From: Vitrella brassicaformis CCMP3155
Lineage: Eukaryota > Protista > Chromerida
Reading direction: 5' to 3'
NCBI GenBank assembly: GCA_001179505.1
Contig: CDMY01001000.1
Location: forward strand, 124,001-188,000
DNA length: 64,000 nt
Both the position numbers and the translations under genes were made by a program. This document shows, one piece after another, positions 273 through 45,079 of the stretch (positions are counted from its first letter, which is position 1; each line of letters begins with the position of its first letter). Below the pieces are notes generated by a model. It did not search any database, was not told where the DNA came from, and worked only from the letters and a program-made list of their open reading frames with translations.

Positions 273-1521
273 AGTGAGTGAGTGGAAGAGACACATGCAG
301 TGCAAGCGGACGACAGCATGGATGAGAGACAGAACAGACACCTGCGATGAATCGATTCTTGGTTCTGTCTGAATCTGCGTGGGAGGGAGATATTTGAGTG
401 AGGGACGGACGGAGGGACACTTCAAAGCCCCATTTTGAATTAGACAGGGGATGGGAGGCACAGCCCCACACACGAATGGCAGAGGCAGAACAGAGGAGGA
501 CAGATGAGCCCACGAGACCAGCCAGGACCGATCAGCCAGCTGGTCAGGCGAGACAGACTCGAGGCAGACACACAAAACACAGCCGGCCGGTCAGTCGTCC
601 AGACGGCCACACGCAGAGAGCGCGACCAACAAACAGACAGACAGACAGACAATGAGAAGAGAGAGGGGCGATGCACTCCCTCCTCTCCGATCAAACCCGA
701 TACACAGTCAGCCAGGCAAGAGGGAAGAGCCCCCGGCCACACACACGAGTTTATGACAAAAACAGCCACCCCCACATGTGTGTGTGTGTGGATTCTCTCC
801 TACTCTATGCTGTACCAAACGCAGCTCAACGTAAGGGACGTAGCTGTCTGGACGGAAGGTTGAAAGACGCTTCAGTCGCTGCTAGCCCACTGCATGTCTG
901 TCCAGTCGCTGCAGAGAAAGCAGCAGAGCAGATATCGGTTGTGGTGAGACAGAATTGAGTGAAGGATGTCTCGCCAACCAGAGTGAGTGAGGTGATGATG
1001 TTTGGAATGGATTGAGTGCCCTTTGAGTGACGCTTCAGATGCGCCAAATGCGGTCTGGCGCGGTGCCTTGGTTGCTGAGAACGGAGCGGCTGTTGTGGAG
1101 GGGTGACACTGTCAGTTGAGAATGAAAGAGAGCGAGTGAGGAGCTGCTGCTTGGTGTGTGTGAGGCTCTCAACTGGCCGGTTCACATTTGGTCCACATGC
1201 AATGGTCGAGATTCAGACCATTGCATCTCGAGATTCTCGACCATTACTACGGAGGCAACTCATTACTGGAGATATTTCATTTCATTTTCGGCGTCCTCAT
1301 GACCACAGTCAGAGTCCCCTCAACGCCTGATGAGCCCGCCTGGTGTCATGAAATCCGTGCCTGCCGTCGGAAATGAGTCTCCTCCATTGGCCGGCCTCGC
1401 CTGCGGGGGAGATGGCGAACAATTGATGGCGAGTGGGGGCGCGTTGAATTAAGGCGCCCTCACCCATGCCAGGCAAACACATTTCCATCACCACAACGCA
1501 CACACACGCACACAGACAGAC

Positions 1522-1553
<32 letters not shown>

Positions 1554-1779
1554 GAGGGACGTCTGTGTCTGTGTGTGTTGATGCGCAGTTCACGAGACCT
1601 TCTTCAGCCGCATTTGCGCCGACGAGGACAGCCAGTCCGACCAGACCAGGACGACGAATCATCTCCTTCACGTACACACACAAACTCTCGGGGGAGAGAG
1701 AGCGGAAGAAGGACAGAGAGGCACGCAGAGATACCCATAAGGATGTGTGTGCGAATGGGTGTAGTGACTCCTCTGCGAA

Positions 1780-2942
1780 ATGCAGCAAGTGCGGCCCCAT
1801 CTTCCGCTGGTGGTGGTGACGCAGAGGGAGGCGCCTCGGCGTCTGCTTAATCGGCACCGGCATCGGCATCATCGTCGTCTGCGCCAAGGGACAGCCAAGT
1901 GTGCCAGGTACATCCCTTGGCGGGGGGCATGTCCCTCTCCAGCCGCTCTCTCTCATCGTCATCTGCCTCTGCTGCTGATGACAGCAACAACACCAGCCAA
2001 AGGCCCCCTCAGCAGCAGCAGGCATCGTCATCCATGAGTCTGTTGTCCCGCAATCCCTTCCTGCCCGACAAAAATGCGTCCAGCAACAGCACATCACCCT
2101 GCCCACCAGCAGCTGCTGCTGCTGCCTCTTCTTCCGCCGCTGCCTCTTCTTCCGCCGCTGCCGCTGCCGCTGCTGCTGGTGGTGGTGGTGGTAGTGAACC
2201 GCCCCCTCTCATACCAGAGGGAAACGCCTCGGCGTCTGCTTCATCGGCAAGGGACAGCCAAGTGTGCCAGGTACGTGTGCACCTGACACCCAGAGGGACC
2301 GTCCGGATGGCTGTGAGTGTGCGTGAGTGCGTGTGTGTATGTGTTTGTGTGTGTGGCCGGTTTGTTCATCATCAGTCATGTCAGTACACCCTCTTGAGCA
2401 GCTCGTCAGCCCTGACTGCATCGTACTCACACACACACACACATAGTGCCTTCTCAGTGCGTCAACCAACCAATCGTGTGTGTCTCTCCCTCAGGTCCCC
2501 GAAGACCCACGACGAGGACCGCGGCGAAGGAGAGGAAGGTGGGCGAAAGGAGAAAGGAATGCATTGACACAGACTTTATGCACTCAGAACATTGTCTTGA
2601 TCGTGGCACGTACAGATCGCTGCTTGCATTTTATATTTGTGAGTCACTTCGTCCAATGGAGGAGTCCCGCCGGCCGATCCGGATCCTGAGGACGGCTCGG
2701 AGCAGTGGAGAGAGGGAAGGGGGGGAAAACGAGGAAGAGGGTAGGGACGTGTCCCACACCGTTAAGTGCGGCACTTTTCTCGTCCCCAGAGACGCCAGAT
2801 GGGTACCCATGCACATCCACCCACAGTCACCACACCACAGCAGAGAGCCATTGATGGACGTTATATCTCTCTGTTGTGTGTTGTGCGTAGGCCACGTGCC
2901 CTGCGTGTCAGAAGGTGTTCTGCCCCCACTGCTCCCGCGAGG
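1780..2942 (+). pseudogene. Degenerate 5' part of an RBR-type E3 ligase (Ala/Ser-rich exons, IBR half-exon)
   Basis: Duplicated exons ending RDSQVCQ|gt (~1836-1910 with an in-frame TAA, and ~2230-2270). Exon 2891-2940 encodes ATCPACQKVFCPHCSRE, an IBR C-terminal CxxC..CxxC. RING1 is not recoverable. Confidence 0.45.
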
Positions 2943-2999
2943 TATGCACACAGAGCTGCCACGGCACGTGGGAGAGTTGGAAGGCGCAGGCAGAGCACT

Positions 3000-3760
3000 C
3001 AAGATTGCCTTCCCTCCCTTGAAGCTATCACCAAGTGGAAGATCCGGATCCTCATGCCTCTGCTGATACCGCTGGTGATATGTGCCATACTGACCATCAT
3101 CTCGACCAACCGCAAATGTGTCCTGGAATGATGGCCACCACAGACGTACGTGTGTCAGCGGAATCAAGTGGGGAAAGCAGCCGTCCCGACGGCACACATT
3201 CGGCGTGAGGACGTCTCGGAGGAACGAGGAGAGGGGGATGGAGCGGGATCTGGGGATGGAGAGTGCCGTCAGACTCTGCAGCTGCTGCTCAGAGTCCGTG
3301 AAGGAGAAGACAAACGTAAGAGAGACCATGGAGAGGGAGAGAAGTCGTCGAGCCACCACATACAGCCGCTCCGCTACGAGACCCACTCGACCTGTGAGAC
3401 TTCCCCCCAGTGGTACGACGATGTCGGCTCGGATGAAGACTGGCCTTTGAGTGTGCTATGCTCCGTCTATCGCTCGCCGGCAATGTGCGGTCCCTCGACG
3501 TCACCTGACGGGGGTCGGGACGCCGCCTCGCCCGTCTCCTCTCGCCGGTAAGCCGTAGGTGCAGCCAGGCAGAGGAGATCACAGACAGCCATTCAGCAAG
3601 CCACGGACATCCCTTTGTCTCTCTTCTCGCTTTGTGTGTGTTTGGTGTGATGTGTGTGTGTGCGTGTGTGCAGGTTTGCTTACCTTCAGTCCCTGCCCGT
3701 TCTGCTGTTGGTCGGCGTGCTGCTGCCGTCGCCCTATATGGTATGCAGCGCATATGCGGT
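3000..3760 (-). pseudogene. Frameshifted antisense coding remnant of unknown family, lying between the duplicated IBR exons
   Basis: Protein-like stretches PVFIRADIVVPLGEVSQVEWV and LVAERLYVVARRLLSLSM...HVRLWWPSFQDTF lie in different frames. Confidence 0.25.
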
Positions 3761-4190
3761 CTTCTGCGCGGACCATTCTGTCTCTTCCTCTCCCTCCCTC
3801 TCTGTCTGGCTGTTTGTTTATGCGTGCAGCGCTCCACCTACATAATGCCGACGCCCTGCACACCAAGCTGGCTCTGTTTGCTGGCCTCTTTGGACTCTTA
3901 GCTCTGGCAGTGCCACTGCCAGTAGGCGCGTTCTGTGGAAAGGAGCGGGTGTGGTCCGGGGCTTGGAGATTCTGTTGGCGTTGTGGCGGTGGGCTGTTGG
4001 GTCGGGACGGACACGAGAATGGAATGGTGCGTGCTAGCAATCGGTGGGATTGTGTGCTCACTTTCTCGCTTTCTCGTCTGTCCGCAGTGGTAATACATGA
4101 GAGGAGCGACGGTCAGTTAGTGCCGCGTCATTCATGCATTCATTCATTCATTCATTCATATGCGTTCTCTCTGTTGCATGTCGTGCGCAG

Positions 4191-5377
4191 GCCACGTGTC
4201 TCGTGTGTCAGAAGGTGTTCTGCCCCCACTGCTCAGCGAGGTACGCACACGAAAGCACACAGGAACGTACACACGCACACATACACCCGCATCTTCTTCT
4301 TGTGTCTCTCTGTGTTTCTCTCTATGTCGGTGAAAACACGCAGGCGCATGACGGCTTGACGTGCGAGGAGGCTGCGGCGGCCTCGGCCGCTGAGGGCGAC
4401 AGGCAGCTAAGCTCGCTCGGAGAGCGAGAGGGATGGAAGGTGGGGCATCAACCACACACGGCACACACATGCCCTTCACACACACATCCGTGTGCGATGT
4501 TGTGTCTCCTTCCGTCAGCGGTGTCCGAGGTGCAGGACGATGTGCGAGAAGGCCAGGGGGTGCAACTTCATGAAATGCGAGGTGTGACCTATGCAAGACA
4601 TACACACACGTCTATCCATGTGGCTGCCTGCGTGTGTGTGTGTGTGTGTGTGCGTTCAGAGTTCGCAATGTCGCGGCCAGGGAGTCTACTTCTGCTACAT
4701 CTGTGGGGTACAACTCCCAATCGAGGAGATATGGATAAGTCACACTCACACATGAGAGGGGGAGACCACACACATACAAACAAAAGAGACACACACAGAC
4801 TCACACACAACCGATGCGATTCGAGGTGTGTGTGCGTGTCTGCAGCACTACAGCCACTTCCCGAATGGCCCGTACGAGTACTGTTGCGTGAATGTTCCCC
4901 AACCGGCCCGACTACCGCCGAGTGAACAACCAGGTACGGATGGATGTACGGCTGTCACCGGGCTGTGTGCGTATGTGCGACTGACCGTGTGTGTAGAGTT
5001 GCTGCCCAATTTGCCCCCCGACAACCCCGCCCCGCCTGATGCCCTTACTGACCCGCCCGCCTTCTCTGCCGCCTTCCCTGACGCCATCAACGACCCAGGT
5101 ACATACGATCAGTGTGTGTCTGTACTCGTTCGTGTATGTGTGTGTGTGTGTGTGTTGTGTTCAGGCATCCGACCACTGGGTCCCCTGGGCGCCCGGTCGG
5201 TCGCCGGCATACGGCGAGTGGGAAGAGACCTGCTCAACCAAAGGCTGCACAGTGAGTGGGTGGCTGGGATGGATGGATGGATGTACTGCTCTATGTGTAT
5301 GTGTGTATGTGTGACTGACCGTGTGTGTAGACGTGCTGCCTGGTGCTGACCCTCCGGCTGACCTGCCTGTCCCCTGA
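4191..5377 (+). CDS. RBR (IBR-RING2) E3 ubiquitin ligase, 3' part; 5' exons missing or degenerate
   Basis: Spliced exons: ATCLVCQKVFCPHCSAR | AHDGLTCEEAAAA | RCPRCRTMCEKARGCNFMKC | CRGQGVYFCYICG | HYSHFPNGPY. This fits IBR plus RING2 with the catalytic Cys in GCNFM. The spliced frame stops at TGA 5375-5377. Confidence 0.75.
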
Positions 5378-5419
5378 CCCTCCTGCTCCCCTCCCTGACC
5401 GACCGGCGCTTCAAGCGGC

Positions 5420-5674
5420 TTCGGTGGTGCACTTCACAGTCAATTACATGACAGGGGTGAGTGAGTGGCCGAGGGGATAACGACAATCATGGCCATCTCT
5501 CTCGTTTCTGTGTCTGTGTGTTTGTGTGTGTGCGTCGAATACCCTCCAGCCGGGGCAGGACATCTACGTCGTGGGGTCCACCGGCCCGCGCCGCCCCAAT
5601 GAGGTGGACGGCGGGGCACAACTGGACATGTTCACTTGATCTGCCACAACAGCGTAAGACACACACACACACAT

Positions 5675-5707
<33 letters not shown>

Positions 5708-5990
5708 TGTCTCCTCTTGTGCCGCGCCTGTCCATATTTGTGTATGTGTGTGTGTGTCGATTCAGCGATAGAATACAAGTTTCTTGTGAATGAGGGCGAC
5801 AGAGTCGAGTGGGAATTTGGGGAGAACCACGAGATGGGCAGGCAAGACCAAGACGGACCACACACACACACGCGTTGAGACACGACGTCTTTGTGTTGGT
5901 GTGTCTTCTTTGCTTGGCGAATGCAATGACTGCAGCTCGAGGTCTTGGAGGAAGACACAGAGGTGCTGGACTGGTGGGGGCAGGGCTGAG
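5420..5990 (+). pseudogene. Decayed CBM20 starch-binding domain exons directly downstream of the RBR ligase
   Basis: VHFTVNYMT | PGQDIYVVGS..AAPMRWTAGHNWTCSLDLP | IEYKFLVNEGDRVEWEFGENH. Paralogous, including introns, to 41070-41760. Carries a 23-nt deletion at ~5580 and a GT>AT donor loss after NHE. Confidence 0.8.
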
Positions 5991-36883: not shown

Positions 36884-37426
36884 CTAGCTCTCAGCAATGC
36901 AGGCGAACGCTTTTGCAAAGACCACACTCGAGCTGGTGCAGCGGTCAAGTCCTCCTGGGGACAGCTCCCGGGCCATGAAGACCTCCTTTGGGTACTCGGT
37001 CTCAAATCGGGCGGCTGCATCCACAGAGAAGCCGAACCTCTGATAGTACTGAGGCGCCCCGACCACAAAGGCCGCCAGCCATTGGCCGTCTTGTTCCAGC
37101 TCGGCCAGGCCTTGCTTGATCAAAGCAGAGCCGAAGCCAGTGCCTTGGTGGGACCGCAGCACCGCCACGGGGGCCAATGTCACACACTGGAGGGGCTGCT
37201 GCAGGCGGGAGAACATGACGTGGCCAACGACCTCTCCGCTCTCATTGTTCTCATTGTTCTCATTGTCCTCGGCCACCAGAGCGACCACCACATCTCCGTC
37301 TTGGCGAAGTTGGTCCACCAGCTCACTCTCGCCGCTGTAGCCGTACTGGGAGCCGGCGAATGCAGTGGCCACGACTGCACGAATGGCGGTGAAGTCACTG
37401 GGCTGCTCTGGTCTTATCAGCATCAT
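36884..37426 (-). CDS. GNAT N-acetyltransferase, YhbS-like, intronless
   Basis: MLIRPEQPSDFTAI..AF..ESELVDQLR, VVGHVMFS, LAPVAVLRSHQGTGFGSALI (acetyl-CoA motif A), VVGAPQYYQRFGF. Confidence 0.9.
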   Translation of the reverse strand: MMLIRPEQPSDFTAIRAVVATAFAGSQYGYSGESELVDQLRQDGDVVVALVAEDNENNENNESGEVVGHVMFSRLQQPLQCVTLAPVAVLRSHQGTGFGSALIKQGLAELEQDGQWLAAFVVGAPQYYQRFGFSVDAAARFETEYPKEVFMARELSPGGLDRCTSSSVVFAKAFACIAES

Positions 37427-37827
37427 CCAGTCAAGTCAATGGCTTCCTGCAAGCACACGCGCTCCACATCGGACATGCTGAACCTTTGTCGTCGCTGCGG
37501 GCTGTCATCGTGTTTTACCTGGACTTCATCATTTCCTCAACCGCCGCATCCTTCCCACCAGATGTCAGTCTAAGCGTTTTTCGCATGCTAAGCTCGCAGG
37601 TTGGATCGCTCACAGATCCGCAGCTTTGTCGAAGCGTGGTTCGCTGTAGATCAGCAGGACATGGCGAGTTCTGAGCGAAGGTCGCAGGCCCCACTGGCCC
37701 CTCGAGCAACAACCACAGTCACCGAGCACAGACGAGAGCGCAGAGACCGGTGGCGCACGATGGACGACAGCAGGGGATGAGGGGCGTGTCAATCTGGTGT
37801 GTTCCTTGTCCCATCAGGGTGTACAAC

Positions 37828-39402
37828 ATGACTCTAGACCAGTTTCCTGCCTTGGAAGCCCTCTCCGAGTCGTTGTCCAAGCGTCAGGTCAGGAGGCTCA
37901 GCCTTGAAGTTTGCCGCTCCCCAGCCGATTCCGGGCTCCCTGTACAAATGGAGACCCCTCCCCTGACAAGCTGGCGGTGGCGCCCGCTGCTGGCCTTGGC
38001 ACTGCGGCTGATGGATTCCATCGTAAGTGCACAGAGAGAGAGACGGGGGGGAGAGGAAGGAAAAGCCGTGCACCCATTTGAGCCCTTGCTGTGTATCTCG
38101 CGCATCCAGGCCGTGTTCAGGGGGTGGTCTACGAGACAGAAGGTGAGAAGCGGCCACCCACACGCCAAATACGACCACCGGCTGTCGTATATGTCGAGAG
38201 ATACCTCCTGTCTGCTTTGGCTGCTTGTAGTTGAAATCCGACAAAGCGGCGGCGGTGAGCCTGTCGTCCATCCGACCACTGAGTTGCCTGCCTCTCTGCC
38301 TGACACACACACACGCGACATGACATAGTACCTTTCTTTGTGTGTGTTGCTTTAGCCCCTCGTTGAGGACATCAAGCTGGCGCGCAAGAGGGCGGCGATT
38401 GGTGTCCAAAGGAACTTCAAGAGGTGGCTCGTCCACAAACCCCTCAAGACCAGGGAGACGCACATCTATTTTTTGTGGCGCGGCGCGTGGAAAGGCGCAA
38501 ACATTGAGCCAGGCCAAAGAGTCGAGGTAAGCGGAGAGACACACAGATGATGGGCATACATGTAATGAGGCAACTCCTCATGTGTCTGCGTGTGTGCAGA
38601 TAAGCGGCGACTTCACGGCGCCCAACGTCTGGTCGGAATGGAAGCTCATGCGGTGGTGCCGTGTGCTAAGGTGAGTCACTCACCCATCTCTACAAATGAA
38701 CATTCTCAACCTGTGTGTCTCTGCTTTGCTGTGCCCTCATGGCGTGCAGGGCGTATGTCTTCGAGTTGCCGTATGCCTCACCCGACGGCCGAGGGCCAGG
38801 CAACTACCATTTCAAGTTCACGGTGGACGGCAAAGAGACCGTCGACCGCCAGACCGTCGGCAGCGAAAAGAAGGAGGGAGAAATATGTATGTCGATCTGG
38901 ACAGTCGACGGCAAGCGAATCTCGCGGCGGGTAAAAAGACATTACCTCGAGACCATCCGTGTCGCTACGAGAGACGCGGAGGGCCGCGAATGTAATGTCA
39001 TATCTGTCCCCGAGCGAAGCTCGACTGCTGTCGCTCTGCCCCCATCGCAGTCTGCGAAGTCAACACTCTCAACAACGCTCTCAATGCAGTCGACCAGACC
39101 GTCACTGACGATGCAGCTGACCCAACCATCACTGACGGAGGACAACAGCCTCAACTACAGCTCTACGGCCCTCGTCACCTTATCCAAGGCGGCCATTGCC
39201 TTCTACAAAGCAGGGCATTTCTCATATCGACCACTGTGGGAGCCTCCTCCCCCTCATGAGTACGAGTGCATTGAGGCCAAATTCCCGGAATTGCAAATAT
39301 GCGGAGTCAGAAATCACGGAAGCAGTAAGCCAAGTGGAATACGCCGCCTCACTCGAGAGACGAATTTCCTCCCTCTCTCCTTCTCTCTCTCTTTCTCTGT
39401 CT

Positions 39403-39438
<36 letters not shown>

Positions 39439-41182
39439 TGTGTTTGTTCAGTGTGTTACCTCAGCAGCTTTGTGCAGTGCCTGCGCCTGACGGACCTGTC
39501 CAGCAGCAATGTGCTCCATTTCAAGCTCGAGAAGAAGGGGGGGAAAAAGAGTCAGGAGGCGTTCAACCCGAATCTGCTGGACGCTGTCAAGACGCTCATC
39601 GCAGAATTCCTCATCACCGAACGGTACGCACCCCCCCCACACACACATGTCCCTCCATCCCTCCGTTGTTTGTGCAGATCGTACCTCGATCCGAGTGACA
39701 TGCTCAAGACGCTTCCCGTGTTTTACGCCATCGGGCGGCAACAGGACGCCACTGAGGCCGGCAGATACATATTCGAGGCTCTTGGCGGACACGCAAAGGT
39801 ACCGTTCTCCCCTTTCAGAGGCGTGTTTGGTGGTCGGGTGGTCACCAAGACAAAGTGCAAGGAGTGCGGCAGGATCAGCGAGAGGCCTGAGAAGATATAT
39901 GACCTCGGACTAGCCGTCCCAACCGAAAAGGCATACAAGAAAATGTCGGAGAAAGGTGATCAGTACACACACACACACACACACACAGATGTACAGCGCA
40001 GTCTCCTGTCTCTCTGTCTCTCTGTCTCTCTGTCTCTCTGTTTGTGCGTCTGTGTGGCTGTATTTGTGTGACAAACAGGTCGCAAGCGTCTGTCGGTGCA
40101 GAAGTTGTTGGAGGACTGCATGAGAGTGGAGGAAATGAGTGGCAACAACGCCTATGCGTGCAGCAAGTGCCTCAAGAAGCAGCCGGCCACCAAGTGGCTG
40201 GAGATTCTCCACCCGCCCAAACACCTCTTCCTCTGCCTCAACCGCTTTGCCTGGGACAGGACCGACGGCCGCTCGAAGAAGCAGAAGACACCCGTCTTCA
40301 TCGACAAGACACTTGTCCTTAATGACGGATTCCTCTACGACCTGTACGCCACCATCATCCACACGGTAAGTGACTGGACACACACAAACACACAGACAGA
40401 GTGAGTGCATCGTGTGTGTGATTGTCTGTCTACAGGGGCCGACCTCCACCTCAGGCCACTACTACACGATTGGCCGCCGGTCGGAGGGCAGCGCACAGCG
40501 CCACAACGAGTGGTACTGCTTCGACGACTCGCGAGTCACGCCCGTCCCTCACACCGTCATCGACAAGATCGCTTCGTCCACTGAGAAAGACGACAGGCCA
40601 TATGTACTCTTCTACAGGTACGCACACTGCGAAAACACACAGAATGCACCATGGATGGATGTGACGTGACCGGCGCACTGTGCAGATGCCGAACGGCGTC
40701 CGTGTCTCCCGTGCCTGCAATTCCTCGGGGCCTCTACGACAAGGCAAGGGCCAAGGAGGAGGCAGCAATCAAGGAGATGACCGAGGCCGGCCGGCAGCAG
40801 CATGAGAAGGAGAAGCACGACAGGACTGAGGAGGCCAAGAAGGTAAGAGACGCCTTCTGCATCCATGTCGTCTGCGGATGACTGTGTGTGCTTGTGATCT
40901 GCAGCTCCGCCTCTCGCAAGAACAAGCGAGCGACGCCGAGCCTTCTCAAAGCCTCGACAACCCCCACGACATCGAAGACCGCGTGTACGAAGCCGCCATC
41001 CGACAGGCCATGCGGCGGGAGGCCATGCGGCGAGCGGACGTACCGCATGAGGGGCCGCTGAAGGGCTCGGTGGACTTTACCATCAACTACATGACAAGGG
41101 TGACTGAGTGGCTGGAGGATGAAGGCATGCATGGTCATCTCTCTCCTTTCTGCGTTCGTGTGTTTGTGTGTTTGTGTATTTC

Positions 41183-41213
<31 letters not shown>

Positions 41214-42127
41214 GCGTTGGATACCCTCCAGCCGGGGCAGAATTTGTATATTGTGGGGTCCATCGAGGAACTTGGGGAGTGGGACCCGGCCCGGGCCGCC
41301 CCAATGAGGTGGACCCCGGGCCACAACTGGACGTGCTGCCTCGACCTCCCGCAAGGGCGTAAGAGACACAGAAGACCACAGGAAGAGAGAGAGAGAGAGA
41401 GAGATGTCTCCTCCTGTGCCGCGCCTGTCCATGTTCGTGTATGTGTGTGTGTTTTTTTCCATTTGTGTGTCTGTGCCGTCGATCCAGCCATTGAATACAA
41501 GTTTCTCGTCAAGGAGGGGGACGGGGTGGAGTGGGAGTTTGGGGGGAACCACAAGGTGGGCAGACAAGAGCAAGACGGACCACACACACACATACACAGA
41601 CACATGGAGATTGAGACACGACCTCTTTCGTTGGTGTGTCTTCTTTGGTTGGTGAATGCAATGACTGCAGCTGGATGTCTTGGAGGAGGAAGACACAGAG
41701 CTGTTGGATTGGTGGGGGCAGGGCGGGGGCTGAGGGAGGAGAGGGGAGGGGAGGGGAGGGGGAGAGGGAGAGGGAGGAGGGCCCCTTCTCGACGCCGTCC
41801 GAGGTCGACCTGACGCTGCTGCCAGCCCGACATCGCGGCACCGGCATACGTGACCCTCTCAACCGAGCCGCGGCCGCATACCCCGCTTCCCACGCGAGCA
41901 CCAAGGTGGTCTCCAAGTCCGTCCAAGGCAAGGCTCCGTTCCACCCTCACTCATCCGCCACCCCCTCACCCAGAACAACCAGCAGCAGGACTCCGCCTAC
42001 AAGCCAAGAGAGAAGCCGCCCTGCCGCACATCGACCGCCGGCGCCATCGCGTCCTCTCCCGCAGCGCCGCATACAAGACGTCCGGCTGGCTGGCCATCTC
42101 TCTCTCTCTGCTTGTCTTCCTCGCTGA
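37828..42127 (+). CDS. IQ-IQ - CBM48-like - USP (peptidase C19) - CBM20 deubiquitinase
   Basis: IQ: IQAVFRGWSTRQK and VQRNFKRW. CBM48/AMPK-beta-like: IYFLWRG..RVE|ISGDFTAPNVW..PGNYHFKFTVDG..CNVISV. Cys box: GVRNHGS|.CYLSSFVQCL. QQDATE; CKECG/CSKC zinc ribbon. His box: SGHYYTIG..WYCFDDSRV. CBM20: VDFTINYMTR|PGQNLYIVGSIEELGEWDP..IEYKFLV..WEFGGNH. The exact 5' exons and last exon are less certain. Confidence 0.88.
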
Positions 42128-43015
42128 CTGACTGACTGACTTTGTGCTTTTCTGTCTTTCTTTGCCTTGTGTTGTCAAGTTAGTGGCTGGCTATAGCTAT
42201 TCGGTCTGTGTCTGTCGAGTGGATGCAGCCAGCGTTACACGACTGTTCGGCTGCTCTATGTCTGCCCCCATCTCTCTTGATCTCTCTCTCTGGCTGCCCG
42301 ATACTGTGTGTCTGTCTGTCTGTCTGTCTGTCAGAGTGTGTGTCTATCTGTGTGTGGTCTGTCTTGCCGCGTGGGAGTGTGTGCGTTGCGGTGAATGAAT
42401 TCCGACTGGCTGACTGGCTGGCTTGTGGAAACAAAAGCACTTATCAATACCTCTCTCCCACTCCCCTCGCCTCCCCAAGTCGGCTCAGCCGATTCAGACA
42501 CTCAGAGAAAGGTCTTCTGCTGAAAAAGCGTCCCCATTTATCACACACATACACACAAACGTCATACTGACACACAAGGAGGCGCCAAACGACCACAGAA
42601 TCGACACAGGAAGGTTGTCTGCAGTGATGCAGTGATTCACTGAATGTAATGCATTTGTACATCATTGATTGATTGATTCATTGCTTGACTGACAAGCACA
42701 CACTCGTGTGACTCGACTGGCGCCACGTCACTGCAGAATGGCAAGGTGATCTCTTCGTTTCATGCAGCCGGCCGATCAAATCCCATTGCAAACTGACTAT
42801 CGTGACACTCATGTGAGAACACAAAACAGTAGCAGTGTGACCATATAGTCACTATGTCCTTCTAACTCGTAAATTCCCTTCCTGTCCGACTCGGCTCTGG
42901 GTTGGTCTCTCGTCCATTTTGAAGAGAGATCTCGGAATCAGTTCTCGCCGCTTTCCAGTCCTCACATATTTCCTGCGTTTTCGCCGCCCATCCCACCACC
43001 CACACCCACAGCACC

Positions 43016-44210: not shown

Positions 44211-45079
44211 TTATGCACGTCAATGCAGACGACAAGAGGATCTTCACGGACAAACCTGCCGAGCCCCTGGCTGTCAGCTACGGCTTTCACATGGCTAAGG
44301 GCGAGAAATACATGTACGACATCATATTCCCCGGCCACCAAAGTACCGACTGACGGACGCCCACAGATCCCCGCCGGCCATCCCCCCTTGTTTGCACGCC
44401 TCTCCCTTCTATTCTCTCTGTCTGTCTGTGTGTCTGTCTGTCTGTCGATCAGTGTACCAGTAGCACGCGCCACGGCTGAGAAGAACCAGCCAAGGACTGC
44501 AACACACCACACACCACACTGGCCACCGGATAGCCAAGGGGGTGAGCTCGTCTCTCTGTGTCCGTCCGGCCACTTCTCGCTCTCTTCCTTTCACAGCCTG
44601 ACTTACTGACTTTGTGTTTTCTTTGTCCCTTTCCCTTTGTGAGTCTGCATGTGGTTTAAGGTTAGTGACCTCCTTCCTGCTTTCGAGGAGCTTGGCTGTC
44701 TGTGTGAGTGGGGGTGCTTTGAAGGCACACACACACACACGCACACGCATGGCCGGGGGGGCGAGTTCGTCACCAAAGGACCTGACAGCCCGACACACAC
44801 AGCGGACTGCGTGGCATTCAACGAGCCCACGCGTGCACCACCAGCCATTAGGCTTCAATTAAGCACGGCAGCTGCCTCTCGACGCCCTTGCAATGGGAAA
44901 AAGCCTCCAAAGCGAAAGCATTAGGGCTTGGGGTGGAGGGTTTGCGAGCTTAGAGGTGCAGTGGCTCCGCGCTGCTCTCTGCAACCGGCTGATCTCCCCT
45001 TGTGTAAGCCTCTTTGAACACTCTGCAGCACCTACACACCGCTCCGCTTCTCAATTCAAGTGATGCCGCGCTGTTTGTG

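What the first reader, a model, noticed from the sequence alone, without database searches (positions are those of the whole stretch)
37828..42127. Deubiquitinase bracketed by two different alpha-glucan-binding modules and IQ motifs
Seen: the spliced order is IQ, IQ, CBM48/AMPK-beta-like (IYFLWRG..VEISGDFT..W..PGNYHFKFTVDG), USP with Cys/His/Asp present (.CYLSSFVQ, SGHYYT, FDDSRV), then a textbook CBM20 (PGQNLYIVGSIEELGEWDP..WT..IEYKF..WE). Established: CBM20 and CBM48 target proteins to starch or glycogen (laforin, STBD1, AMPK-beta); IQ motifs bind calmodulin; chromerids and apicomplexans store amylopectin; malin and HOIL-1 tie ubiquitin to glycogen control in animals. Inference: a Ca2+/calmodulin-regulated DUB acting on storage-polysaccharide granules, an architecture I do not recognise as described.
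Basis: partly seen in the sequence, partly recalled or inferred. Interest (0 to 1): 0.85.

Follow-up and report, generated by a model that had tools for sequence, protein, structure and literature searches.

The report
Starch-tethered deubiquitinase gene in Vitrella
The alga Vitrella brassicaformis has one intron-rich gene that joins an apparently active ubiquitin-removing enzyme to a textbook starch-binding domain and a second, weaker glycogen-binding-like domain; this combination is not described in the papers searched and could link ubiquitin to the control of cytosolic starch.

Summary
The core observation holds. The window is Vitrella brassicaformis CCMP3155. The stretch is one 16-exon gene (37661-41733, + strand, all 15 introns GT-AG). 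It translates exactly to the public protein CEM38811.1 / A0A0G4H4U3 (898 aa), which is named only "ubiquitin carboxyl-terminal hydrolase".

- **USP core:** Pfam UCH on residues 382-695, E 7.6e-33. Cys391, His643, Asp665/666 and the four zinc-ribbon cysteines are present.
- **CBM20:** residues 803-886, E about 1e-20. All four residues that align with the maltose-binding site 1 of CGTase are kept.
- **N-terminal module:** AMPK-beta/CBM48-like but below Pfam's cut-off (24.1 against 26.8 bits). ESM Atlas features and model support the fold. One of the two sugar-stacking Trp appears to be missing.
- **IQ motifs:** both below the cut-off. The first exists only with an unannotated acceptor.
- **Coordinates:** the stop is at 41733, not 42127.
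- **Transcripts:** contigs confirm two introns and join the CBM48/linker exon to the USP Cys-box exon. The USP-to-CBM20 joins rest on the gene model.

The closest USP relatives (39% identity) lack both CBMs, and no ortholog or paper with this architecture was found. The scan noted this stretch before (s1-205614).

Best reading: a cytosolic deubiquitinase tethered to starch granules. Calmodulin control is weakly supported. It is a new variant of a known kind.

The parts
37661..41733 (+). Whole coding span of the gene: 16 exons and 15 GT-AG introns of 54-132 nt. It encodes the 898-aa protein CEM38811.1 / A0A0G4H4U3.
   Evidence: The exon model translates exactly to P0001. The public annotation calls one gene over the same span.
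37661..37749 (+). Annotated first exon (30 codons, basic, no hydrophobic signal peptide).
   Evidence: The absence of a signal peptide is by inspection only.
38083..38142 (+). First IQ-like motif. The annotated exon is 38110-38142 (AVFRGWSTRQK). The full IQ consensus (IQAVFRGWSTRQK) needs the alternative acceptor at 38082/38083.
   Evidence: Pfam IQ 19.8 bits, E 6e-4, cut-off 20.3, for 38083-38142. Both splice variants keep the frame. No read evidence covers this place.
38404..38445 (+). Second IQ-like motif (VQRNFKRWLVHK, residues 134-145).
   Evidence: Pfam IQ 16.7 bits, E 0.006, below the cut-off of 20.3.
38458..38912 (+). AMPK-beta/CBM48-like module (residues about 152-252), split over three exons.
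   Evidence: Pfam AMPK1_CBM E 4.4e-5, 24.1 bits, below the cut-off of 26.8. ESM Atlas features score 0.95 to AMPK1_CBM clusters, and the Atlas model aligns to AMPK1_CBM/CBM48 clusters at TM 0.48-0.55. My own AF2 model failed.
38913..39299 (+). Ser/Thr/Pro-rich linker (residues about 253-381) on the same large exon as the C-terminal half of the CBM48-like module.
   Evidence: Composition. No Pfam hit. Transcript contigs cover 38958-39121 and 39172-39324.
39300..40615 (+). USP (peptidase C19) catalytic domain, residues 382-695. Cys391 is at 39454-39456, His643 at 40457-40459 and Asp666 at 40526-40528. The zinc-ribbon cysteines are C507, C510, C567 and C570.
   Evidence: Pfam UCH 114.6 bits. PDB sequence hits to USP35 (E 3.5e-25), USP36, USP1 and USP21. 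The catalytic residues are invariant against P0015 and P0016.
39325..39451 (+). Intron confirmed by a transcript contig. It joins the CBM48/linker exon to the Cys-box exon.
   Evidence: Record 2 of run X1 ends at 39324 and carries on with 17 letters identical to 39452-39468.
39956..40078 (+). Intron confirmed by a transcript contig inside the USP domain.
   Evidence: Record 3 of run X1 lies on 39874-39953 and 40077-40289 without a break. This equals the GT-AG cut at 39955/40079.
40687..41060 (+). Charged Ala/Glu/Arg-rich linker (residues 697-800) between the USP and the CBM20.
   Evidence: Composition. No significant Pfam hit.
41067..41694 (+). CBM20 starch-binding domain, residues 803-886, over four exons. 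Its first strand sits on the same exon as the linker. The site-1 residues are W830, K860, W871 and N876.
   Evidence: Pfam CBM_20 72.1 bits. The phmmer alignment to CGTase domain E places the four residues opposite W616, K651, W662 and N667. Pairwise dN/dS against the in-window paralog is 0.13.
41734..42127 (+). Not part of the coding sequence: purine-rich low-complexity sequence and a high-copy element in the 3' flank.
   Evidence: The stop is at 41731-41733. The annotation ends there. Depth is 1300-5100 in short contigs of the DNA runs.

Best explanation
This is a single nuclear gene of Vitrella brassicaformis. It encodes a cytosolic, catalytically competent USP-family deubiquitinase with a C-terminal CBM20 and an N-terminal AMPK-beta/CBM48-like module.

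Proposed mechanism:
- The CBM20 docks the enzyme on the surface of the cytosolic starch granules. The CBM48-like module may add avidity or sense glucan.
- The USP core, held on two flexible linkers of about 100-130 residues, then removes ubiquitin from proteins that sit on the granule, such as starch-metabolising enzymes or regulators. This would oppose E3 ligases that act at the same surface.

Shown: the gene structure, the domain identities, the intact catalytic and site-1 residues, partial transcription, and purifying selection on the CBM20.

Inferred: starch binding, DUB activity, the substrates and the localisation. Regulation by calmodulin or a light chain through the IQ-like motifs is possible but weakly supported.
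For: - One frame through 16 exons with canonical introns, identical to the public model.
- Transcript contigs join the CBM48/linker exon to the Cys-box exon and confirm a second intron.
- The first CBM20 strand shares exon 40905-41099 with the linker, so the CBM20 is not a separate gene.
- UCH E 7.6e-33, with the Cys, His, Asp and Zn-ribbon residues invariant against the nearest relatives.
- CBM_20 E 3e-20, with W830/K860/W871/N876 aligned to CGTase W616/K651/W662/N667.
- The CBM20 codons show dN/dS 0.13 against their paralog.
- The AMPK1_CBM-like module is supported by Pfam E 4.4e-5 and the ESM Atlas.
- Vitrella starch is cytosolic.
- CBM20 has precedent as a targeting device for regulatory enzymes and for a ubiquitin ligase: laforin (PMC9254107) and RNF213.
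Against: - No experiment and no localisation data exist.
- No transcript evidence covers the USP-to-CBM20 exons or the first five introns.
- The CBM48-like match is below Pfam's cut-off and, by eye, lacks the second stacking Trp. CBM20 site 2 is not conserved (Gly opposite the CGTase Tyr).
- No ortholog with this architecture was found, so the protein may be lineage-specific and dispensable.
- dN/dS is a pairwise average and cannot be assigned to this copy alone.
Confidence: 0.55

Rival explanations
1. Glucan-directed ubiquitin esterase. The enzyme's real substrate is ubiquitin ester-linked to the glucan itself, as HOIL-1 makes on glycogen in animals. The CBMs position the USP active site on the polysaccharide.
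For: - Ubiquitinated glycogen exists in cells, and its deubiquitinases are an open question (PMC13345935 Discussion, PMC12203941 section on deubiquitinases).
- USP catalytic domains are used in vitro on Ub-maltoheptaose and Ub-glycogen.
- An RBR-like gene with a paralogous CBM20 tail lies 32 kb upstream.
- Two glucan-type modules bracket the core.
Against: - There is no evidence that starch is ubiquitinated in any alveolate.
- The upstream RBR-like gene gives only sub-threshold IBR hits, and its CBM20 copy is frameshifted in this assembly.
- Nothing in the USP core marks esterase preference.
Confidence: 0.15
2. Glucan-sensing rather than glucan-tethering. As in the AMPK beta subunit, the CBM modules report starch status and switch the DUB on or off allosterically, and its substrates lie elsewhere in the cytosol.
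For: The N-terminal module is of the AMPK-beta type. It sits next to IQ-like regulatory motifs. Long flexible linkers separate the domains.
Against: No contact surface or autoinhibitory element can be shown. The single-sequence structure model failed. The CBM20 with an intact site 1 is the classic granule-anchoring type.
Confidence: 0.15
3. Lineage-specific domain-shuffling product of little functional consequence. Segmental duplication pasted a CBM20 cassette onto an ordinary USP, and the fusion persists without a starch-related role.
For: - The CBM20 cassette (41060-41733) has a DNA-level paralog with the same three intron positions at 5413-5989.
- The nearest USP relatives lack both CBMs.
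- No ortholog was found.
Against: - dN/dS is 0.13 at dS of about 0.8, so the cassette has been kept under purifying selection for a long time.
- All site-1 residues and all catalytic residues are intact.
- The gene is transcribed, at least in part.
Confidence: 0.1
4. Gene-model artefact. Two or three neighbouring genes (a CBM48 protein, a USP and a CBM20 protein) are wrongly merged.
For: No read evidence spans exons 1-6 or the four joins from exon 12 to exon 16. Only contigs of a small RNA run were available.
Against: - One frame with 15 canonical short introns and no in-frame stop.
- A transcript contig bridges the CBM48/linker exon and the Cys-box exon.
- The CBM20 starts in the middle of an exon that also encodes the linker.
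- The independent public annotation gives the same gene.
Confidence: 0.05

Closest known systems
Laforin (CBM20 + dual-specificity phosphatase) with the E3 ligase malin
   Same: A CBM20 brings a regulatory enzyme to a storage glucan, and the system is tied to ubiquitin through malin. An alveolate counterpart, TgLaforin, acts on cytosolic amylopectin (PMC9254107).
   Different: Here the enzyme on the CBM20 is a USP deubiquitinase, not a glucan phosphatase. The CBM20 is C-terminal, and there is a second CBM48-like module.
HOIL-1 (RBCK1), the RBR E3 that ubiquitinates glycogen and unbranched glucans
   Same: It links ubiquitin chemistry directly to alpha-glucans.
   Different: It has the opposite activity (writer, not eraser). 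As far as I know, HOIL-1 has no CBM. It is animal, not alveolate.
RNF213 N-terminal CBM20
   Same: It is a ubiquitin-system enzyme that carries a CBM20 (PMC12203941).
   Different: It is an E3 ligase acting on bacterial LPS. The role of its CBM20 is unclear, and no DUB is involved.
AMPK beta subunit carbohydrate-binding module (Pfam AMPK1_CBM, CBM48)
   Same: It is the best family match for residues about 152-252. The G-x-F...W and [YF]KF-x-VDG motifs are kept.
   Different: The match is below Pfam's cut-off. The Trp after VDGx appears to be replaced (by eye, from memory of AMPK beta1 W133). There is no AMPKBI domain, and the module is fused to a DUB.
Human USP35/USP38, USP36 and USP1 catalytic domains
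   Same: They are the closest solved catalytic cores (USP35 E 3.5e-25). USP38-like clusters are the nearest by structure. The full Cys box, His box and zinc ribbon are present.
   Different: The relationship is only distant. The accessory domains are entirely different.
Toxoplasma CDPK2 (CBM20 + Ca2+-dependent kinase); own knowledge, not checked here
   Same: It is an alveolate signalling enzyme placed on cytosolic amylopectin by a CBM20 and controlled by Ca2+.
   Different: It is a kinase with EF hands. Here the enzyme is a DUB, and at best there are IQ-like motifs.

Membership tests
USP deubiquitinases (peptidase C19, Pfam PF00443 UCH) | Profile match above the curated cut-off over the whole domain | tested here: met
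   114.6 bits against a cut-off of 23.9; profile positions 1-254 of 254 on residues 382-695.
USP deubiquitinases (peptidase C19, Pfam PF00443 UCH) | Cys box with the catalytic Cys and the upstream oxyanion Asn | tested here: met
   N386 and C391 are invariant in the alignment with P0015 and P0016. The motif reads GVRNHGSMCY.
USP deubiquitinases (peptidase C19, Pfam PF00443 UCH) | His box with the catalytic His and the Asp/Asn | tested here: met
   H643 and D665/D666 are invariant. They align with USP35.
USP deubiquitinases (peptidase C19, Pfam PF00443 UCH) | Hydrolysis of ubiquitin conjugates | not testable with these tools
   Needs a Ub-AMC or di-ubiquitin assay.
CBM20 starch-binding domain (Pfam PF00686) | Profile match above the curated cut-off | tested here: met
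   72.1 bits against a cut-off of 23.3; profile positions 3-92 of 97. 47 PDB CBM20 chains match at E up to 0.01.
CBM20 starch-binding domain (Pfam PF00686) | Binding site 1 residues (Trp, Lys, Trp, Asn) | tested here: met
   W830, K860, W871 and N876 lie opposite CGTase W616, K651, W662 and N667 in the phmmer alignment. That those CGTase residues form maltose-binding site 1 is my own knowledge.
CBM20 starch-binding domain (Pfam PF00686) | Binding site 2 aromatic residue (CGTase Y633) | tested here: not met
   Gly lies opposite Y633. Site 2 is variable among CBM20s, so this does not bar membership.
CBM20 starch-binding domain (Pfam PF00686) | Binds starch, amylopectin or cyclodextrin | not testable with these tools
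   Needs a co-sedimentation or ITC assay.
CBM48 / AMPK1_CBM (Pfam PF16561) | Profile match above the curated cut-off | tested here: not met
   The isolated region 140-290 gives 24.1 bits against a cut-off of 26.8, E 4.4e-5. The whole-protein score of 35.4 bits includes a cross-hit on the CBM20. The collection's precomputed Pfam record for the annotated gene marks this family 'faint'.
CBM48 / AMPK1_CBM (Pfam PF16561) | Beta-sandwich fold like the AMPK-beta CBM | tested here: inconclusive
   ESM Atlas features score 0.95 with 173 shared features. The Atlas model aligns at TM 0.48-0.55 to AMPK1_CBM/CBM48 clusters. My AF2 single-sequence model had pLDDT 31 and is unusable.
CBM48 / AMPK1_CBM (Pfam PF16561) | Two sugar-stacking Trp plus Lys (AMPK beta1 W100, K126, W133; from memory) | tested here: inconclusive
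   By eye, W185 and K221 are present and the position after VDGK is Glu, not Trp. No tool alignment to a solved AMPK-beta chain could be obtained.
IQ calmodulin-binding motif (Pfam PF00612) | Profile match above the curated cut-off of 20.3 bits | tested here: not met
   16.7 bits for residues 129-145. 19.8 bits for the alternative-splice version of the first motif.
IQ calmodulin-binding motif (Pfam PF00612) | Consensus [FILV]Qxxx[RK]Gxxx[RK] | tested here: inconclusive
   The consensus is fully met by IQAVFRGWSTR, but only if the acceptor at 38082/38083 is used. The annotated splice gives SIAVFRGWSTR. The second motif, VQRNFKRWLVH, meets the first half only.

The most novel reading that the evidence does not exclude
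Vitrella runs a starch-granule-directed ubiquitin system. CBM20-bearing ligases (the RBR-like gene upstream, and the F-box-like and RING fusions noted elsewhere in this genome but not checked) would write ubiquitin onto granule proteins or onto the glucan itself. This USP would be the dedicated, glucan-tethered eraser. In the strongest form it would be a natural deubiquitinase specific for ubiquitin-glucan esters, a class of enzyme that has not been identified in any organism.
Probability: 0.12. Interest if true: 0.9.

Novelty: new variant of a known kind. Interest (0 to 1): 0.6.

Why it matters
Ubiquitination of glycogen by HOIL-1, and the malin-laforin system, have made 'ubiquitin on storage glucans' an active field. 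Both the 2025 review and the 2026 Nature paper say that the deubiquitinases on this axis are unknown.

A natural protein that joins an intact USP core to a bona fide starch-binding domain is a ready-made candidate for that role. It can be tested directly with existing reagents: Ub-maltoheptaose, starch pull-down and Ub-AMC. The organism also suits the question, because its starch lies in the cytosol, within reach of the ubiquitin system.

The gene also shows how CBM20 cassettes move between ubiquitin-system genes by segmental duplication. If the fusion proves to be a lineage-specific curiosity, it is still a useful natural design for a glucan-targeted DUB.

Tried and rejected
- **AF2 model of residues 95-300.** Run without an alignment, it gave pLDDT 30.7 and is unusable, so no fold search was run on it.
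- **phmmer of the N-terminal module against PDB.** It found no AMPK-beta chain.
- **Exhaustive phmmer with the large exon (38751-39323).** It found only the protein itself. The other six hits are bacterial Ig-like or low-complexity proteins.
- **Word-based searches.** I searched the whole protein, the USP region and the CBM20 region. None found a protein that combines UCH with CBM20 or CBM48. Their length filter (494-1571 aa) means that shorter or longer kin could be missed.
- **ESM Atlas search of residues 378-898.** It found no cluster with both families.
- **Metagenome scan.** It found no relative.
- **Homology of the N-terminus to P0015/P0016.** I had thought the Vitrella N-terminus retains homology to the long N-terminal region of P0015/P0016. 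BLASTP shows nothing (best E 1.4), so I rejected the idea.
- **The frame-0 ORF running to 42124/42127.** It is not coding for this gene. The CBM20's last exon ends at the TGA at 41731-41733, and the annotation agrees.
- **Rfam on 41600-42400.** It found nothing.
- **Read laying.** The call used 4,701 letters.
Full report
**Identity and gene structure**

It has 15 exons, every intron is GT-AG and 54-132 nt long, and it gives an 865-aa product.

An exhaustive phmmer search with the largest exon (38751-39323) returned one strong hit, P0001, at 100% identity. P0001 is CEM38811.1 / UniRef A0A0G4H4U3 of Vitrella brassicaformis CCMP3155. It is 898 aa long, and its only informative name in the sources is UniRef's 'Ubiquitin carboxyl-terminal hydrolase'. 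It is the sole member of its 90% cluster.

With one more annotated 5' exon (37661-37749) my model translates exactly to P0001, and all 15 introns are GT-AG. The public assembly calls one gene over exactly this span. A GNAT gene lies head to head upstream, and the next gene starts about 1.3 kb downstream. The stop is TGA at 41731-41733.

**Transcript evidence**

Only one small run that behaves as RNA holds part of the stretch, at 100% identity.
- One contig lies on 39874-39953 and 40077-40289 without a break. This is the GT-AG intron 39956-40078.
- Another contig ends at 39324 and carries on with 17 letters identical to 39452-39468. This is intron 39325-39451.

The second join links the exon that holds the C-terminal half of the CBM48-like module and the linker to the exon that holds the USP catalytic cysteine.

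Nothing covers the first five introns or the four joins between the last USP exon and the CBM20 exons. For those I rely on three things: the continuous frame, the independent public model, and the fact that the first CBM20 strand lies on the same exon (40905-41099) as the linker. The three DNA runs cover the locus, but their contigs break at the microsatellite-rich introns.

**Domains**

On the full protein Pfam gives UCH at residues 382-695 (E 7.6e-33, full profile length), CBM_20 at 803-886 (E 1e-18) and UCH_1.

*USP core.*
- The nearest solved cores are USP35 (E 3.5e-25), USP36, USP1 and USP21.
- Against its two nearest relatives, these residues are invariant: N386, C391, H643, D665/D666 and the four zinc-ribbon cysteines C507, C510, C567 and C570.
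- The enzyme therefore looks catalytically competent.

*CBM20.*
- Alone it scores 72.1 bits and matches 47 solved CBM20 chains at E up to 0.01.
- In the alignment to Bacillus circulans CGTase domain E, W830, K860, W871 and N876 lie opposite W616, K651, W662 and N667. From my own knowledge these form maltose-binding site 1.
- The site-2 Tyr633 is opposite a Gly.

*N-terminal module.*
- Alone (residues 140-290) it gives AMPK1_CBM at E 4.4e-5 but only 24.1 bits, under the curated 26.8.
- The ESM Atlas places residues 150-265 nearest to AMPK1_CBM clusters (0.95, 173 shared features). Its own model aligns to AMPK1_CBM/CBM48 clusters, including AMPK-beta and SEX4-like phosphatases, at TM 0.48-0.55.
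- My own single-sequence AF2 model failed (pLDDT 31).
- I read this as a probable CBM48-type fold.
- By eye, the first Trp (W185) and the Lys (K221) of the AMPK-beta sugar site are kept, and the second Trp is replaced. Glucan binding by this module is therefore open.

*IQ motifs.*
- The second (residues 134-145) scores 16.7 bits against a cut-off of 20.3.
- The first is a perfect consensus in the genome (IQAVFRGWSTR). However, the annotated acceptor at 38109/38110 cuts between Q and A.
- It survives only with an alternative AG at 38081-38082. That version also keeps the frame and scores 19.8 bits. No reads decide this.

**Relatives and novelty**

The closest USP cores are two proteins from Logan assemblies, on contigs of 2.8 and 3.9 kb that look like transcripts (P0015 and P0016; 39% identity over 98% of the core, E 1e-63 and 1e-57). 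They have a different, long N-terminal region and end right after the core. Pfam finds no CBM in them. BLASTP finds no N-terminal homology to P0001.

None of the searches found another protein that joins UCH to CBM20 or CBM48. These were the whole-protein, CBM20-region and exon-6 searches, the ESM Atlas search and a metagenome scan. The searches have length and sensitivity limits, so absence is not proven.

Full-text searches found no paper on a USP with a starch-binding module, and none citing the accession. The recent preprint on myzozoan starch metabolism does not mention ubiquitin at all.

The precedents are:
- laforin and TgLaforin, where a CBM20 sits on a phosphatase;
- RNF213, where a CBM20 sits on an E3 ligase;
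- HOIL-1, which ubiquitinates glycogen.

Both recent sources state that the deubiquitinases acting on such non-protein conjugates are largely unknown.

**Context in the window**

The CBM20 cassette (41060-41733) has a DNA-level paralog at 5413-5989 with the same three intron positions and the same stop.
- The paralog follows an RBR-like RING2 motif. Its Pfam IBR hits are only sub-threshold.
- Across the coding parts, dN/dS is 0.13 at dS of about 0.8. The cassette is therefore old and has been under purifying selection, which argues against a neutral, recent accident.
- In this assembly the paralog has a 23-nt gap that removes the loop with the first site-1 Trp and shifts the frame.

Unchecked first-reader notes report further CBM20 fusions to F-box-like, RING and kinase proteins elsewhere in this genome. 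I could not test them.

**Interpretation**

Vitrella keeps its starch in the cytosol, around the pyrenoid. The protein has no visible signal peptide. The most economical reading is a cytosolic USP tethered to starch granules by its CBM20, acting on ubiquitinated granule-associated proteins (confidence 0.55).

The rivals are:
- a ubiquitin-glucan esterase (0.15);
- a glucan-sensing switch of the AMPK-beta kind (0.15);
- a functionally idle shuffling product (0.10);
- a merged gene model (0.05).

Calmodulin control is a possibility, not a finding.

**Verdict**

The second glucan module and the Ca2+/calmodulin layer are over-read, and the end coordinate is wrong.

The protein is already in public databases with its Pfam hits, but it is unstudied. 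I rate it a new variant of a known kind (USP with a substrate-targeting accessory domain; CBM20-targeted regulatory enzyme), with interest 0.6. This stretch was also noted in another window of the scan (s1-205614).

Noticed in passing
window 5413-5989 (with RBR-like pieces at about 4190-4760): There is a paralog of the USP gene's CBM20 cassette, with the same three intron positions and the same stop. It lies behind an RBR-like RING2 motif (CPRCRTMCEKARGCNFMKC). Pairwise dN/dS is 0.13 and dS about 0.8. A 23-nt gap removes the IEELGEWD loop and shifts the frame, giving a premature stop in this assembly. This could be a pseudo-exon, a recent break or an assembly error.
   Followed up: partly
window 41835-42096: The 3' flank of the gene is matched by short contigs at depth 1300-5100 in three DNA runs, against about 50 for the gene. 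The RNA-like run also covers it, at depth up to 149. This looks like a high-copy element. Rfam finds nothing, and only one weak copy (44568-44637, 74%) is in the window. A (CTGA)n microsatellite follows, ending near 42130.
   Followed up: partly
window 36884-37426, minus strand: A single-exon GNAT acetyltransferase gene (180 aa; Acetyltransf_1 E 1.7e-10) lies head to head with the USP gene. Its start codon is 234 nt from the USP gene's ATG, so the two may share a promoter region.
   Followed up: partly
window 38023-38109: The frame stays open through annotated intron 2 (38023-38109). The perfect IQ consensus straddles its acceptor, which suggests alternative splicing, intron retention or a mis-set acceptor at this place.
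   Followed up: partly
window 39366-39456, 39958-40049, 41151-41223: The introns are packed with (GT)n, (CA)n and (GA)n microsatellites. The contigs of all three DNA runs break exactly there.
   Followed up: no
P0015 / P0016 (locus L001, Logan SRR9047231): The nearest USP relatives share a conserved N-terminal region of about 300 residues with no Pfam family. It contains motifs such as IWLDVPS and QVCRDPTGHS. This may be an undescribed accessory domain of this USP subfamily. The source organism is unknown.
   Followed up: no
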